Assembly (NCBI RefSeq): GCF_001194135.2
Contig: NC_068985.1
Location: forward strand, 33,239,984 to 33,303,983
Length of the DNA: 64,000 nucleotides
Direction: 5' to 3'
From: Octopus bimaculoides
Taxonomy: Eukaryota
In this document: one piece after another, positions 1,826 through 15,273 of the stretch
How the letters are laid out: each line of letters starts with the position of its first letter
Numbering within the stretch: the first letter of the stretch is position 1
Translations under genes and position numbers: made by a program
The notes under the pieces: model-generated
The model's input: the letters and a program-made list of their open reading frames with translations, nothing else
The model's database searches: none
Told to the model about the DNA's origin: nothing

Positions 1826-1917
1826 GTTTTTGATAAGCTCATTGATAGCCATGGATACCATATCACCATTCATTAAAATTTATGTAAATGAATTTCATAA
1901 AATACCAAACAAATTAG
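1826..1917 (+). CDS. SETX-like gene internal exon (FLISSLIAMDTISPFIKIYVNEFHKIPNKL)
   Basis: tttttttcttgttaaatatcag acceptor, TAG|GTAATT donor, phase 2-1, in frame with the next exon. Confidence 0.6.
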
Positions 1918-4900
1918 GTAATTATGATATAATTTTATTTTTAATTATTATTTCTTGTTTCTCCTGTTGTCCATTGTTAGCAACCATGATTACCTTCAGA
2001 GTTATTCAAACCCCATCTTCCAGGTTTCTCTTTCAAGATGTGGATGTGCATAATTGTGAAGGTTGCTTGCTAAAAGTATTTCTTTCTAAGTTGGGCTGTC
2101 TTTTGCAAATTTCTAGCAACATTCTTGGAGATCTGCTATTTTTTTACTTCCATGAACAAGTTAAAATTGATGTGAGCTTTGGTCCTTCTTTAGCTAGCCA
2201 AAAGATGCTGAGAATTTCCTGTAAATACATGTCCTCAATGTTGCCACATGATATAGTTTCCTCTAAGATTGTTCTTTCTCATAGTCTTTGGCTCTAAAAG
2301 ACAATGGAATACCAATGCAGAACAAAGATGTGTATGTCCACAAGGCATTGCATACACTTGCAGTTAATGTAACAGTAGTAATATGAAAAAGGAATTTTCC
2401 TTATTATGAAAAGTATGAAATTTGCTGTCAAAACCAGAAAGTCAAGTGCTAAATTAAATTACTTAAATTAGTGTGCTCTAATTCTAGATACATATCAATG
2501 ATCCTCATCATCATCATTTAACATTTGCTTTCCATGCTGGCATGGGTTAGACAGTTTGACTGGAACTGGTAAGCCAGAGAGCTGCACCAGATTCCAGTCT
2601 GATTTTGACTTGATTTCTACAGCTGGATGCCCTTCCTAATGCCAATTACTCCAAGAGAGTAGTGGGTGCCTTTTATGTGTCACCAACACTGGTGCTTTTA
2701 CGTGTCACAGGCATAGGTGCTGTTACATCATCTTCACTGTCCACAACTACAATTTCACTTGGCTTGATGAGACTTCTGAAGCACAACAAATTACCAAAGG
2801 TCACAATCACTTGTCATCACCTCCGTGAGACTCCATATTCAAAGATCAGACTTCACCACCTCTTCCCATATCTTCTTGGGTCTACATTTTCAATAGGTTC
2901 CTTCCACAATTAGAGATCAGCACTTCTTTACACAGTTATCCTCATCCATATGCATCACATGACCAGCACAGTTGCCTCTCTTGAACACCACATCTGATGC
3001 CTCTTGTACCCAATTTTTCTCTCAAGATGCTTACACACTGTCAGACATGGCCTTTGTTGCCAACAAAAGTAGAAGCTCTCTGAACTTTGCCCAGCCTCTT
3101 TTTATTCTAGCAGCTACACTCTAGGAGCAATCGCCTCCACTACTGACTTTTGTTGTTCCTGTACATCTGCCATGCACAAAGACTATTTTCCCTGTTAACC
3201 TTCCTCTGATATTGATGCACCTCTCATATGTCCATAGCTTTCACCAGGTACCCCATATGGAGTTTCTACCTATGTCTTTTCTACATATTGAGCAGGGTCA
3301 TCTACCTGAATAGATTTTTGATTTGTCTGCTTTCCTACTTACTAAGACTTTGGTTTTTACTAAATTAACTCTAAGGCTCTTTGATTCCAGACCTTGCTTC
3401 CATACCTGAATTTTTTTTCTACATTTCTAGTTGTGATTCAGCAATAACAACAAGGTCATCAGCATAGAGGAGCTCCCATGGGCAGCCCGACTCAAATTCC
3501 TCTGTTATTGCCTGGAGGACTATGATGATCAGGAGGGGGCTGAGGGCTGATCCTTGGTGAACTCCTATTTCTACACTGAATTCATCGCTATACTTGTTGC
3601 CAACCCTCACCTTACTGACAGAGTCCCTGTACATGGCTTGTACAGCTCTCACCAACCACTCATCTATCTCTAGATTCTGCAATGACCATCAGATAAGGGA
3701 TTGAGGGACCCTGTCAACAGCTTTCTCTATGTCAGCAAAAGCCAAGTACAGAGGTGTATTTTTGGCTAGGTACTTCTCCTGCAGCTGCTTTACCAGGAAT
3801 GTAGCATCAGTGGTGCTTCTCCCTGACACAAAACTAAGCAGCATCTCATCTTACCTAACTCTCTTCCTAATTAGTTGGGCTATGACCCTCTCCATAACTT
3901 TCATCACCTGATTTGACCCTCTCCACGTAAATATATTATTCATTTCAGCAAAACTAGAGGATTTTAAAAATATGACCTGCTATAATAGTAAAATAAAAAA
4001 AAAATTTGTTGATGCCTTTTATGAAGTTTGGATGCAATACCACCATCTGTCCCTGTTCTATCTCTGCAATTGAAAACCAGCTGCTGTGACAACTAAAATG
4101 AGTAGAAATTTTAAATGTAAAATGAAAAGCATTATTTTATTAGACTACACTATTTGCAGTAAGAAATCTTAATGGAATTCTATTCAGTGTTCAAAATGAC
4201 GTCTTGTGAATACAACTAAAGCATTTCTCAACAGATATTTACAAAATCATGAATGCCTTGTATTGGAACAAAACCATGAGTGTCACTCATAACAGTTCAA
4301 GAATTTCTTAAAAGTGTACCTGTATAAAAATAAACAGAGTGTATTAAATTTCTCTCTGCCAAGACTTTTTTGTAAGAATATGGATATTAGATGCATCAAA
4401 GTTAAATGATCATGTATTAGAAAGGCTACACACATGAAATCCATTCAAGAATGACAGCACAAACAAGCTGAGAGAGAAACTGAACATAAGATGTATTAGA
4501 TGTAGTGTGAAGAGGGAAGATTGTGTTTGTATGAGCATGTGGCATGTATGAAGGAGGGCGGCTTTATAAAAAAGGGCTGTATGTCCAAAGTGAATGGGAG
4601 CTGCATAAGAGAGAAACTAAAGAAGACTTGGAAATAAGTGATGAAGACAGATCTAAGGTAGTTGATGGAATTGCATTGATTGGTGAAATACTGTGCAGAA
4701 AACTCTTTATTCAGGCATGATGAAACAGATGTTAAAATTTCTGTATATAAGTGCAGGCATGGCTGTGTGGTAAGAAGTTTGCTTCCAAACTACATGATCT
4801 TGGGTTCAGTTTCATTGCGTGTCTTCTTACGCAGGTGTCTTTTACTCTAACTTCAGGCTGATCAAAGCCTTGTGAGTAGATCTGGTTAGCAGAAACTAAA

Positions 4901-13900: not shown

Positions 13901-15273
13901 TTACCAACCACTCATCCATCACCAGTTTCTGCATTGACCACAAGATAAGGGATTGAGGGACCCTGTCAAAGGCTTTCTCCGAGTCAACAAAAGCCAAGTA
14001 CAGAGGTTTATCTTTGGTTTAGTATTTCTCCTGCAGTTGCCTTACCAGAAATATAGCATCAGTGGTGCTTCGGCCTTGCACAAAGCCAAACTGCATCTCA
14101 TCTGGGTTAACTCTCTCCCTAATTAGTACTCTATGACCCTATTTGTAACTTTCATCACCTGATCCAATAATTTGATATCCCTGTAGTTATTTCTATCTAA
14201 AGCATCACTTTTAGCTTTGTAGCAGTTGACTATGATGCTGCTACATCAGTCATTGGATATGACTCCTTCATGAACTACCTGATTTACAATGCAGGTGACA
14301 AGACCATAACCCATTAATTTTAAGAACTTTTGATTCCAGCTTTTGCTTCCACCCCTGGAGTTTCTTTCATTATTATAATACAGATTCTGTTATAAGAACA
14401 AGGTCATCAGCATTTAGTAGTTCCCACTAGCAACTAGTCTGATATAGCCTGAAGGACTAAGACACATAGGAGGCTGAGAACCAGGCCTTAGTGAACTCCT
14501 GCATGTACACTAAATTTGTTGCTAACTCTCACCTTTCTAACAGTATCCTTGTACATGACTTGTATGGCTCTTACAAAGCATCCCTCTATCCTAAACTTCC
14601 TCAGTGACCACCATATCACAGAGCAAGGGACTCTGTTGAAGATTTTCTCTTAATCAACAAATGCCAAGCTTATTTTTGGCCAAATACTTCTGCAGTTGTC
14701 TAAGAAGATGGCATTAGTAATACTTCTCAACACAAAACCAAACTGCATCTCATTTACTCCAAATCTGCTCTTAATTAATTTGGCTATAACTCTTCCTGTA
14801 ACTTTCATGAGCTGGTCCAAGAATTTGATAACATTGTAATTACTTCTAAGGCATCTCCTTGTAAAATTTGGCTAAAATGCTAGTATACCAATCTGGGTAT
14901 GACACCTCTCTGTAAAACCTGATTAACTATACCAGTGACAATGCAATGATTCTTATGGAGAAGGAGCTTTTCCTGCCTTCATATCTTTAGTTTCTTTATC
15001 TACCATAATAGATGAGGACAGTAACTTTTTAATCATTTTTACAATTTTTTTATTAAATTTATACTGTAATTTTAATCCTGAAAGTCAATGAAAGTTTGTG
15101 AAACTTAAAAGCATAAAAAGAAATTAGTCTTTTTGTTTTCCTAAATTATTTTCTTTTTTTTTTCCATCTTTCAGATTGTTATAGCTGATGCTGCCAATCA
15201 TACTGAAATGCCAGTTGTACTACCACTATTACTGAATAACATCCAGGGTGTTTTTCTGTTTACTACACCATGA
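1826..15273 (+). CDS. 3' part (4 exons, about 231 aa visible) of a senataxin/Sen1-like SF1B helicase-derived protein with degenerate ATPase motifs; 5' exons lie before the window
   Basis: Phase-consistent exons 1826-1917, 9639-9812, 11377-11708, 15175-15273 with canonical AG/GT. Peptides ISSLIA, NKLVEQIFP, QIIVCSKEDSTLDAIANQL, IMRVADEK, ILANSHIIFCNIVTT, IVIADAANHTEMPVVLPLL follow the motif order of SETX as recalled. Confidence 0.7.
2504..3925 (-). mobile_element. RTE LINE, 5'-truncated and decayed, with (GAT)n tail
   Basis: [37 protein letters not shown] in ORF 3419..3682; tail at 2504-2660. Confidence 0.9.
4754..5030 (+). mobile_element. tRNA-headed SINE (family with gcaagtgtcttc...gaaactgaaagaagccc core), truncated by the RTE insertion
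   Basis: Same family as 17620-18005, 46903-47293 and 49167-49563. Confidence 0.7.
5031..6266 (+). mobile_element. Young RTE LINE 3' fragment (RT C-terminus, long 3' UTR, GAT tail)
   Basis: GDQVSSEGGCAESVAARIRIAWAKFRELLPLL...; RT stop at 5594; near-identical to the 63.1-63.96 kb copy. Confidence 0.93.
7354..9095 (-). mobile_element. Small Gypsy-type LTR element (two ~350-bp LTRs, tRNA-Trp-type PBS, PPT, 4-bp TSD); interior mostly in an assembly gap
   Basis: LTRs about 8744-9095 and 7354-7697 start TGTAGT and contain AATAAA; PBS TGGTGACCCCCGACG at 8740-8726; purine-rich GGCAAGGGAGCTC before the 3' LTR; TSD ctca at 7350-7353 and 9096-9099. Confidence 0.88.
7906..8600. other. Assembly gap (695 N)
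   Basis: Run of N. Confidence 1.
9639..9812 (+). CDS. SETX-like gene internal exon (VEQIFPEQIEKY...QIIVCSKEDSTLDAIA)
   Basis: cttttcag acceptor, A|GTAAGT donor, phase 1-1, motif Ia-like segment. Confidence 0.8.
10005..10385 (+). mobile_element. tRNA-derived SINE (second family)
   Basis: A-box TGGCCCAGTGG and B-box-like GTTTTGATTCC head followed by repeat body. Confidence 0.65.
10785..11140 (-). mobile_element. RTE 3' end relic
   Basis: GTPRKTWYEVLKNDFRTLNLS peptide plus family tail. Confidence 0.8.
11377..11708 (+). CDS. SETX-like gene internal exon (NQLKIQQILKNCIMRVADEK...NSHIIFCNIVTT...KKKM)
   Basis: catttccag acceptor, ATG|GTAGGT donor, 332 nt open, motif Ib-like segment. Confidence 0.82.
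12340..14300 (-). mobile_element. RTE LINE, about 2 kb, decayed
   Basis: AFVDSEKAFDRVP; KLEVVDSFRYLGDQVCSGGG..AARIRIAWAKFRELLPLL; GAT tail at 12340-12360. Confidence 0.92.
14300..15000 (-). mobile_element. Older RTE RT relic adjacent to the previous copy
   Basis: Repeats the same RT region (ELLNADDLV-like, QFGFV) with more decay. Confidence 0.7.
15175..15273 (+). CDS. SETX-like gene terminal exon (IVIADAANHTEMPVVLPLLLNNIQGVFLFTTP*)
   Basis: Long polypyrimidine tract plus ttcag acceptor, phase 0, tandem TGA TGA, AT-rich UTR-like sequence with AATAAA at 15683-15688. Confidence 0.75.
   Translation: MVIADAANHTEMPVVLPLLLNNIQGVFLFTTP

What the first reader, a model, noticed from the sequence alone, without database searches (positions are those of the whole stretch)
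1826..15273. Intact spliced gene encoding a catalytically dead, truncated senataxin-like pseudo-helicase
Seen in sequence: four phase-consistent exons with canonical splice sites give about 231 stop-free residues ending in TGA TGA, and they have survived LINE, LTR and SINE insertions in the introns. Established knowledge (human SETX recalled from memory): ISSLV..NQLARAVLNP ... GPPGTGKS ... VLVCAPSNAAVDEL ... LVRLGPEK ... IILESHIICCTLST ... VIVDEAGQSCEIETLTPL..LILVGDPKQL. Here the same order reads ISSLIA..NKLVEQIFP ... (no P-loop) ... IIVCSKEDSTLDAI ... IMRVADEK ... ILANSHIIFCNIVT ... IVIADAANHTEMPVVLPL..VFLFTTP*. The Q-motif/Walker A region is missing inside a single exon (9639-9812), so a missed exon cannot explain it. 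Walker B DE has become AD, motif III GD.KQL is lost, and the RecA2 domain is absent. Inference: a SETX paralogue kept as an ATPase-dead scaffold or RNA-binding adaptor, possibly in germline or small-RNA biology. I know of no described family like this.
Basis: partly seen in the sequence, partly recalled or inferred. Interest (0 to 1): 0.85.

Follow-up and report, generated by a model that had tools for sequence, protein, structure and literature searches.

The report
Dead half-helicase tail of larger gene
The four exons are real and conserved, but they are the last four exons of a larger octopod RNA-helicase gene that starts outside the window; they encode an ATPase-dead, half-length helicase-like tail, not a stand-alone senataxin-like pseudo-helicase.

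Summary
Exons 1826-1917, 9639-9812, 11377-11708 and 15175-15273 have AG/GT borders and join into 231 stop-free codons ending TGA TGA. The assembly gap at 7906-8600 lies in intron 1 and hides no exon.

The only true relative found in an exhaustive protein search is a 745-aa Argonauta hians protein. The 231 aa align to its last 216 residues (E=6e-30). That locus is syntenic with the window: exon lengths (92/92, 174/168, 332/332, 99/96) and phases match, the stop falls at the same position, and a convergent SEL1L gene follows.

In Argonauta these exons follow an apparently intact HELZ/MOV10-like SF1B helicase core. A single 798-nt exon links the core to the tail. The window therefore holds only the 3' end of a larger gene.

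The tail is weakly but reproducibly AAA_11-like (RecA1). It has no P-loop signature, ADAAN in place of DEAAQ, and a stop where motif III would sit.

It evolves fast but under constraint: dN/dS about 0.6 (95% interval 0.42-0.84) at dS about 0.9.

A specific link to senataxin is not supported. Function is inferred: a non-catalytic regulatory or docking module.

The parts
1826..1917 (+). Exon A. This is an internal coding exon, third from last before the terminal exon. It is 92 nt, enters in phase 1 and has no start codon. It encodes FLISSLIAMDTISPFIKIYVNEFHKIPNKL, which corresponds to the end of the barrel-like region plus an 'LNExQ'-like relic (YVNEF).
   Evidence: AG|G...G|GTAATTAT borders. 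Orthologous to Argonauta L001:20419-20510, also 92 nt, same phase, same GTAATTAT donor. 33% aa identity.
7906..8600 (.). Assembly gap inside intron 1. It is not part of the coding sequence.
   Evidence: N run. Flanked by a 97% direct duplication, 7359-7697 and 8749-9095. The protein alignment is continuous across the exon A/B junction.
9639..9812 (+). Exon B, 174 nt. It covers the position of the P-loop and the following helix, then a motif Ia-like strand (KYQIIVCSKEDSTLDAIA).
   Evidence: AG/GT borders. Orthologous to L001:23526-23693, 168 nt. hhalign and local-pair MAFFT place IVCSKED on motif Ia of HELZ-like cores. Default MAFFT disagrees for this half.
9674..9697 (+). Position where Walker A (GxxxxGK[ST]) would lie. 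It reads EYPTNGVR here and GSLMNN in Argonauta. There is no P-loop signature and no lysine.
   Evidence: Alignment to the Argonauta core GSFGTGKT and to 11 HELZ/MOV10-like cores. The placement in this half is uncertain.
11377..11708 (+). Exon C, 332 nt. It encodes the IMRVADEKTED strand, a lineage-specific insertion holding the best-conserved block (YLHExLLxKNxLF), and a motif Ic-like strand (SHIIFCNIVTT).
   Evidence: AG/GT borders. Orthologous to L001:25814-26145, also 332 nt. Used alone, it retrieved Argonauta P0002 at E=6.9e-9 from 1.84 billion representatives. 36% aa identity.
15175..15273 (+). Exon D, the terminal coding exon. It encodes IVIADAANHTEMPVVLPLLLNNIQGVFLFTTP, then TGA, with a second TGA at 15274-15276. 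The protein ends where motif III (GDxxQ) would begin.
   Evidence: AG border and stop. Orthologous to L001:26719-26814, which ends LILFTK-TAA at the same position. No conserved sequence lies downstream until the last SEL1L exon. ATTAAA/AATAAA-type hexamer at 15376 (expected by chance in AT-rich DNA).
15175..15198 (+). Walker B relic IVIADAAN. Canonical IFIDEAAQ has become D->A, E->D and Q->N. Argonauta reads VIIADADY.
   Evidence: Gap-free alignment of 21 consecutive residues to the Argonauta core and to HELZ/MOV10-like cores. Sen1 aligns over the same stretch.

Best explanation
Window 1826-15273 holds the last four coding exons of a larger octopod gene. The 5' part of that gene lies upstream of the window start. 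By orthology with Argonauta hians, it encodes a complete Upf1-like (SF1B) RNA helicase core of the HELZ/MOV10 kind.

The four exons encode a C-terminal extension of about 230 residues. It is a degenerate copy of the first half of such a helicase: the end of the barrel region, then a RecA1-like alpha/beta domain. It has no P-loop signature, its Walker B acids are replaced (ADAAN), and a conserved stop codon falls exactly where motif III would start. It has no RecA2 partner.

It cannot bind or hydrolyse ATP the way a helicase does. This follows from established motif knowledge and was not assayed.

Shown here:
- the exon structure;
- synteny and orthology with Argonauta;
- the state of the motifs;
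- weak purifying selection.

Inferred only: the tail works as a non-catalytic module in cis. It could be a docking surface for a partner or RNA, or an intramolecular regulator of the active core in the same polypeptide. Inactive helicase cassettes and pseudohelicases act this way elsewhere.
For: Exon model:
- 231 stop-free codons with canonical borders.

Orthologue:
- An exhaustive search with exon C finds one true relative, Argonauta hians P0002.
- The joined peptide aligns to P0002 residues 529-744 at E=6e-30.
- P0002 residues 32-304 are AAA_11 (54.5 bits) plus AAA_12 (97.5 bits), both above threshold.

Synteny:
- The Argonauta gene is followed by a convergent Sel1 gene. The window has the same arrangement.
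- Exon lengths are 92/92, 174/168, 332/332 and 99/96. Phases are the same and the stop is at the same position.

Link between core and tail in Argonauta:
- One 798-nt exon (L001:17269-18066) runs from motifs V/VI through 213 further codons to a GTAAGT donor. The phase fits the next exon.
- Walker A (GSFGTGKT) and motif Ia exons lie upstream in the same locus.
- No helicase-core match exists anywhere in the window.

Domain identity:
- AAA_11 is hit independently by both species' tails, at E=1.5e-4 and 2.3e-5.
- hhalign against 12 HELZ/MOV10-like proteins gives E=4.4e-4, colinear over 132 columns from the post-Walker-A helix to motif II.
- The MAFFT alignment is colinear.

Selection:
- Tail: dN 0.54-0.62 and dS 0.9-1.4. 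NG86 omega is 0.60, bootstrap 95% interval 0.42-0.84, with 0 of 500 replicates at or above 1.
- Neighbouring SEL1L: dS 0.7-0.9 and dN 0.02.
- Neutral simulation keeps the frame open in 0.5% of runs at 0.2 substitutions per site per lineage. It does so in 0 of 3000 runs at 0.35-0.45.

Precedent:
- The RecA1-like domain of the pseudohelicase MUT-15 is a protein docking platform (bioRxiv 10.64898/2026.09.04.749402).
Against: - The upstream helicase exons of the window's own species are not in the window. The link to a core rests on orthology with one other species, whose gene model is itself a prediction split into two partial models.
- No transcript evidence was available. Neither the tail nor the exon C ORF of this species is on record in the protein collections.
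- All AAA_11 scores are below Pfam's gathering score of 27 (22.1 and 24.8 bits).
- hhalign probability is only 34%. A HELZ-like core HMM scores just 7.2 and 4.5 bits (shuffle p about 0.005 and 0.01).
- The alignment of the N-terminal half (the P-loop region) depends on the method used.
- dN is about 25 times that of SEL1L, so constraint is weak.
- The single-sequence AlphaFold2 model was unusable (pLDDT 34.7), so the fold is not confirmed.
Confidence: 0.75

Rival explanations
1. Same gene structure, but the tail has no function of its own. It would be the decaying relic of a partial duplication or fusion. Its frame would stay open mainly because a premature stop in a non-terminal exon triggers nonsense-mediated decay of the whole helicase mRNA.
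For: Divergence is very high: 34% aa identity and dN 0.54-0.62, against dN 0.02 for the neighbouring SEL1L at similar dS. All catalytic motifs are lost. No relative exists outside octopods in 1.84 billion representatives. Family-profile scores are weak.
Against: Omega is significantly below 1 (0.42-0.84, with 0 of 500 bootstraps at or above 1). Avoiding stops alone would not produce that. Conserved residues cluster in blocks (CSKE, YLHExLLxKNxLF, IADA, PLL, LFT) that fit buried strands and one specific surface. Exon lengths are conserved, and the stop sits at the same position in the terminal exon, where NMD gives no protection.
Confidence: 0.17
2. One reading: an independent, truncated, senataxin-derived pseudo-helicase gene of about 231 residues, expressed on its own.
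For: The four exons form a closed unit ending in a stop. An ATG (M9) lies in exon A. The only helicases among the solved-structure profile hits are Sen1 entries.
Against: Exon A begins at an acceptor in phase 1, and homology to Argonauta covers residues 2-7, before M9. M9 is not conserved. In Argonauta the same exons continue an upstream helicase reading frame. The Sen1 hits are not significant (E=0.26-0.97) and cover only motifs Ic-II. The host gene's relatives are HELZ/MOV10-like.
Confidence: 0.05
3. The Argonauta model wrongly fuses two neighbouring genes, a helicase and a separate downstream gene. On this view the window's exons belong to a separate multi-exon gene that merely begins outside the window.
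For: The Argonauta annotation is imperfect. The gene is split into two partial models and the Walker A ORF is left unannotated between them. The splice from the 798-nt exon to the next exon is predicted, not observed.
Against: The 798-nt exon has no stop after helicase motif VI. It stays open for 213 more codons in AT-rich DNA and ends at a canonical GTAAGT donor. Its phase (2 nt) complements the 1-nt start of the next exon in both species.
Confidence: 0.03

Closest known systems
HELZ / MOV10-type Upf1-like SF1B RNA helicases (Pfam AAA_11 + AAA_12)
   Same: The Argonauta orthologue of the host gene has the full motif set: GSFGTGKT, SAADLF, DEAAQ, GDSYQ, NYRC, QGKEF and SRAK. Its closest database relatives (28-35% identity) carry zf-CCCH, MOV10 barrel/helical domains or PAM2-like ends. 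The tail itself is colinear with the RecA1 half of these proteins.
   Different: No relative found carries a second, dead half-helicase after RecA2. All relatives cover only the core, 29-46% of P0002. The tail has no special affinity to its own core: identity to any core is 12-20%. An internal duplication is therefore plausible but unproven.
Senataxin / Sen1
   Same: It belongs to the same superfamily (SF1B, AAA_11). The Ic-II stretch aligns with Chaetomium Sen1...EILDKAQVLCATLSG...TVIIDEAAQCVELSALIPL.
   Different: The match is not significant (E=0.26-0.97) and is confined to about 53 residues. The gene it belongs to is closer to HELZ/MOV10-like proteins, and to UPF1 among solved structures.
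Inactive second helicase cassette of Brr2 (Ski2-like SF2). Cited from my own knowledge, not from a tool.
   Same: One polypeptide carries an active helicase unit followed by a helicase-like unit that has lost catalysis. The second unit serves regulation and partner binding.
   Different: Brr2's second cassette is a complete two-RecA cassette of another superfamily, and it still binds nucleotide. Here only a RecA1-like half is present and the nucleotide-binding motifs are gone.
Pseudohelicases such as C. elegans MUT-15 (bioRxiv 10.64898/2026.09.04.749402), Utp25 (PMC9539457) and D. radiodurans PriA (PMC4504706)
   Same: These have a helicase fold with degenerate ATP motifs, reused as a scaffold. 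In MUT-15 the RecA1-like domain is the docking surface for a partner.
   Different: They are stand-alone proteins with both RecA-like domains, and they are DEAD-box or PriA types. This one is SF1B-like, is half a core, and is fused to an apparently active helicase.

Membership tests
SF1B Upf1-like helicase domain 1 (Pfam AAA_11) | Score at or above Pfam's gathering score of 27 bits | tested here: not met
   Window tail: 22.1 bits, E=1.5e-4. Argonauta tail: 24.8 bits, E=2.3e-5. Both are reproducible but below threshold, and both cover only the C-terminal part of the profile.
SF1B Upf1-like helicase domain 1 (Pfam AAA_11) | Walker A / motif I, GxxxxGK[ST] | tested here: not met
   No such signature occurs in the 231 residues. 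The aligned position reads EYPTNGVR in the window and GSLMNN in Argonauta.
SF1B Upf1-like helicase domain 1 (Pfam AAA_11) | Walker B / motif II, DExx (DEAxQ) | tested here: not met
   ADAAN in the window and ADADY in Argonauta, aligned without gaps to DEAAQ.
SF1B Upf1-like helicase domain 1 (Pfam AAA_11) | Motif III (GDxxQLxP) and a following RecA2 domain (AAA_12) | tested here: not met
   The protein stops at the motif III position in both species. Nothing helicase-like lies downstream, and the SEL1L stop codon is 1.1 kb away on the other strand.
SF1B Upf1-like helicase domain 1 (Pfam AAA_11) | RecA-like alpha/beta fold | tested here: inconclusive
   The single-sequence AlphaFold2 model has pLDDT 34.7. 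Its strand/helix order fits, but at no usable confidence. No deeper alignment could be built.
Senataxin / Sen1 | Specific sequence affinity to Sen1/SETX helicase domains above other SF1B families | tested here: inconclusive
   The profile of the two tails hits Sen1 entries 8ftm, 8fth and 8ftk at E=0.26-0.97 only. No other solved helicase is hit at all. Neither result is significant.
Senataxin / Sen1 | Sen1-type accessory subdomains and the long N-terminal helical domain | not testable with these tools
   The upstream part of the gene lies outside the window. In Argonauta the upstream part is HELZ/MOV10-like.
HELZ/MOV10-like helicase gene (the whole gene) | Complete AAA_11 + AAA_12 core with motifs I-VI | not testable with these tools
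   Met in the syntenic Argonauta orthologue. For the window's species the exons would lie upstream of position 1.
HELZ/MOV10-like helicase gene (the whole gene) | Orthology of the window's exons to the 3' end of that gene | tested here: met
   E=6e-30 over all four exons, matching exon lengths and phases, the same stop position, and the same convergent SEL1L neighbour.
Pseudohelicase (working concept) | Helicase-derived domain that lacks the catalytic motifs yet is kept under purifying selection | tested here: met
   The motifs are lost. Omega is 0.42-0.84, below 1, with an intact frame at dS of about 0.9. Lack of ATPase activity itself was not assayed.

The most novel reading that the evidence does not exclude
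Octopods keep a lineage-specific HELZ/MOV10-like RNA helicase that carries, in the same polypeptide, a truncated ATPase-dead copy of a helicase RecA1 half. It ends precisely at motif III and has been preserved since before the Argonauta/window-species split. It would act as an intramolecular regulator or a partner/RNA docking platform for the active core. Its best-conserved block (YLHExLLxKNxLF), which lies in a lineage-specific insertion, would be the functional surface. I know of no described SF1B helicase with such a 'one-and-a-half helicase' architecture.
Probability: 0.4. Interest if true: 0.5.

Novelty: new variant of a known kind. Interest (0 to 1): 0.35.

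Why it matters
If the tail is functional, it would be an SF1B example of a helicase that regulates or targets itself through a dead half-copy of its own kind of domain. 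That adds to the small set of pseudohelicase modules and gives a compact system for asking what a lone RecA1-like domain can do. It also marks a fast-evolving, octopod-restricted RNA helicase, a class often tied to RNA surveillance, transposon control or antiviral defence. The practical lesson is more modest. The striking 'truncated pseudo-helicase gene' is largely an effect of the window edge, and the Argonauta annotation of this gene is fragmented and could be corrected.

Tried and rejected
- Word-indexed homology search with the joined peptide found nothing. It shares no 5-residue word with its only relative.
- phmmer of the peptide against PDB found nothing.
Exon C alone was used instead. 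Three of its four hits (P0001, P0003, P0004) are repeat-protein artefacts.
- I spent the last homology search on concatenated SEL1L exons, hoping to identify the species and fetch more octopod loci. It returned no cephalopod protein. No third species was obtained, so no multi-species codon model was possible.
- Look-up of the exon C ORF in public assemblies found nothing on record. The window's species stays unidentified beyond 'octopod-like, syntenic with Argonauta'.
- AlphaFold2 on the Argonauta tail without an alignment gave pLDDT 34.7. No fold search was run on it.
- An alignment mixing tails, window exons and cores placed the N-terminal half inconsistently. It was not used for a second prediction, which would also have been circular.
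- Test of internal duplication: BLAST of tail against own core gave at best E=0.002, around motif II only. hhalign of the 441-residue Argonauta extension against the family gave E=0.3. Identity to its own core is no higher than to other cores. The origin of the tail and the nature of the 220-residue linker remain open.
- A pseudogene reading was considered and rejected on the open frame, omega below 1 and conserved exon structure.

Full report
1. The observation.

Each is bounded by AG on the left and GT on the right. Joined with a one-base offset they give 231 codons without a stop, followed by TGA TGA. The unread stretch 7906-8600 lies inside the first intron. It is flanked by two 97% identical copies of about 340 nt, 7359-7697 and 8749-9095. 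It is probably a repeat or assembly problem and does not touch the reading frame.

2. Is it helicase-like?

- Pfam finds AAA_11 at E=1.5e-4. The score of 22.1 bits is below the curated cut-off of 27. The match covers residues 113-220, so it spans the exon C/exon D junction.
- PDB by sequence and the word-indexed protein search gave nothing.
- The exhaustive search would not take a spliced peptide, so exon C alone was used. Among 1.84 billion representatives it found one true relative, P0002 (E=6.9e-9). The other three hits were repeat-protein artefacts.

3. The key relative.

P0002 is 'hypothetical protein Ahia01_000569900, partial' of the octopod Argonauta hians, 745 aa. The whole 231-residue peptide aligns to its last 216 residues, 529-744, at 32% identity and E=6e-30. 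The alignment crosses all three splice junctions.

Upstream in P0002, residues 32-304 are a regular AAA_11 C-terminal part plus AAA_12. Both score far above threshold (54.5 and 97.5 bits) and carry DEAAQ, GDSYQ, NYRC, QGKEF and SRAK.

4. Synteny and exon structure.

In the Argonauta genome the gene (L001:10001-26814, +) is followed by a convergent Sel1-repeat gene. The window has the same arrangement:
- SEL1L-like exons lie on the minus strand from 33330 down to 16401.
- They are 92-100% identical in protein and 84-86% identical in DNA to the Argonauta ones.
- The SEL1L stop codon is only 1.1 kb from the stop at 15273.

The last four Argonauta exons match the window's exons closely:

| Window exon | Window length (nt) | Argonauta length (nt) |
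|---|---|---|
| A | 92 | 92 |
| B | 174 | 168 |
| C | 332 | 332 |
| D | 99 | 96 |

Intron phases are the same, and the first donor is GTAATTAT in both. The stop falls at the same position: LFTTP-TGA in the window and LILFTK-TAA in Argonauta.

In Argonauta the exon before these four is a single 798-nt open exon (17269-18066). It runs from helicase motifs V/VI through 213 further codons to a GTAAGT donor, in the phase the next exon needs. Further upstream, the same locus encodes the barrel region, Walker A (PPFVIIGSFGTGKTETL) and motif Ia. The annotation splits the gene into two partial models and leaves the Walker A ORF unannotated between them.

No part of the helicase core matches anything in the window. 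The 1825 bases before exon A hold only mariner-like debris. The window therefore contains only the 3' end of a larger gene. The N-terminal 'truncation' is an effect of the window edge. The C-terminal truncation, a stop at motif III with no RecA2, is real and conserved.

5. What the tail is.

A local-pair MAFFT alignment of both tails with the Argonauta core and 11 relatives is colinear throughout. In order, it covers:
- the end of the barrel region (F..MH.AL...VV.P);
- an 'LNExQ'-like relic (NEF);
- motif Ia (KILVCTPSN against QIIVCSKED);
- the 'vRl' strand (IMRVAD);
- motif Ic (IVVTT against IIFCN);
- motif II.

At motif II, 21 consecutive residues align without a gap. IFIDEAAQALE..LLPL becomes IVIADAANHTE..VLPL, so D->A, E->D and Q->N. 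The protein ends where GDxxQ would begin.

Supporting comparisons:
- hhalign of the two tails against the family gives E=4.4e-4, probability 34%, over 132 columns in the same register.
- The Argonauta tail hits AAA_11 on its own at E=2.3e-5, 24.8 bits.

The P-loop signature is absent. The distance from NEF to IVCSKE is 52 residues, against 49 in the Argonauta core. In addition, a default MAFFT run aligned this half differently. The first half is best called degenerate, with uncertain register.

6. Which family?

The host gene's relatives are 28-35% identical over the core only. They include proteins with a CCCH zinc finger, MOV10 barrel/helical domains or PAM2-like ends, and one is named MOV10L1 by its source. 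Among solved structures the core is closest to UPF1 (E=1.6e-9), then Sen1 and IGHMBP2. So the gene is a HELZ/MOV10-like member of the Upf1-like SF1B helicases.

The tail has no measurable preference for any family:
- Its identity to any core, its own included, is 12-20%.
- A HELZ-like core HMM gives only 7.2 and 4.5 bits, with shuffle p of about 0.005 and 0.01.
- The only solved helicases its profile touches are Sen1 entries, at E=0.26-0.97 over motifs Ic-II.

'Senataxin-like' is therefore not supported beyond generic SF1B resemblance. An internal partial duplication of the host's own first half is the most economical origin, but it is unproven.

7. Is it maintained?

Between the window and Argonauta, the tail shows:
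- 34% amino-acid identity, evenly spread over the four exons at 31-36%;
- dN 0.54-0.62 and dS 0.9-1.4;
- NG86 omega of 0.60, bootstrap 95% interval 0.42-0.84, with none of 500 replicates reaching 1.

The neighbouring SEL1L exons give dS 0.7-0.9 and dN 0.02. The synonymous distance is therefore the same, and the tail's protein changes about 25 times faster.

In a neutral simulation the frame stays open in 0.5% of runs at 0.2 substitutions per site per lineage. It stays open in none of 3000 runs at 0.35-0.45. All alignment gaps are in frame.

Conserved residues cluster in CSKE, YLHExLLxKNxLF, IADA, PLL and LFT. The best-conserved block lies in an insertion of about 21 residues that canonical cores lack.

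This is coding sequence under weak purifying selection, not a pseudogene. One caveat applies. Selection against premature stops through nonsense-mediated decay could help keep exons A-C open. It would not explain omega below 1, nor the conserved stop in the terminal exon.

8. Mechanism.

Shown: the tail lacks every residue class that SF1 helicases use for nucleotide binding and hydrolysis, and it lacks the second RecA domain.

Inferred from established helicase knowledge: it cannot act as a motor.

Inferred by analogy only: it serves as a binding or regulatory module for the active core in the same chain. Two analogies apply:
- the inactive second cassette of Brr2 (my own knowledge);
- pseudohelicases such as MUT-15, whose RecA1-like domain docks a nuclease module.

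No expression, partner or structural data were obtainable. The single-sequence AlphaFold2 model was unusable (pLDDT 34.7).

9. Verdict.

The sequence observation is right. The gene-level reading is wrong in one important respect, because this is the tail of a bigger helicase gene. The family label (senataxin) is unsupported.

What remains of interest is an octopod-restricted, fast-evolving HELZ/MOV10-like helicase with a conserved dead half-helicase at its C-terminus. That is a new variant of a known kind, of moderate interest, and it rests on two species.

Noticed in passing
window 16401-33330 (minus strand); exons e.g. 16401-16550, 19440-19616, 19630-19962, 25579-25839, 28976-29158, 33199-33330: A SEL1L-like (Sel1-repeat, ERAD adaptor) gene runs convergent to the helicase gene. 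Its C-terminal transmembrane exon ends at 16401. It is 92-100% identical in protein to the Argonauta hians neighbour (dN 0.02, dS 0.7-0.9). About 110 nt beyond its stop are also conserved (window 16287-16565 against L001 30932-31209, 85%).
   Followed up: partly
window 7359-7697 and 8749-9095, either side of the N gap 7906-8600: Two 97% identical direct copies of about 340 nt flank the assembly gap, about 1390 nt apart. This suggests a tandem repeat or a duplicated assembly joint rather than unique missing sequence.
   Followed up: partly
window 18375-19346 (+), and fragments at about 690-1500 (+): A mariner/Tc1-like transposon remnant (Pfam HTH_48 at E=1.4e-11, and weak DDE_3) lies inside a SEL1L intron. 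A second fragment, mariner-like by eye only (its one tested piece, 813-1007, gave no Pfam hit), lies just upstream of exon A.
   Followed up: partly
window 62202-63430 (+, interrupted by N gap 62456-63091); 13037-13997 (-); 4954-5594 (+): These look like LINE-type retrotransposon fragments of one family. The copy at 62202 hits RVT_1 (E=1.1e-8). The copies in introns 1 and 3 of the helicase gene share its C-terminal ORF motif (...AARIRIAWAKFRELLPLL...) by eye only; they gave no Pfam hit.
   Followed up: partly
window 2498-2662, 6100-6268, 12329-12501, 28513-28660, 43204-43365, 61431-61597, 63807-63964; many sites in L001: A short interspersed repeat of about 165 nt has at least 7 copies in the window, three of them in the helicase gene's introns. 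Many copies at 70-74% identity occur in the Argonauta locus, so the family is old and shared among octopods.
   Followed up: no
L001 (Argonauta hians BAAFZT010000027.1:25344419-25381232), 1-10300: The Argonauta annotation splits one helicase gene into two partial models, of 342 aa and 745 aa. The ORF that encodes Walker A (L001:6450-6662) is largely left out: the upstream model ends at 6500, before the GSFGTGKT codons. The 745-aa model starts in the middle of an open exon (9851-10300).
   Followed up: partly
L001 17269-18066 (Argonauta P0002 residues 305-528); no counterpart in the window: A linker of about 220 residues sits between the active core and the dead half-helicase. It has no family match. 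The low-confidence model shows a run of beta strands, which might be a second barrel, but nothing supports that yet.
   Followed up: partly
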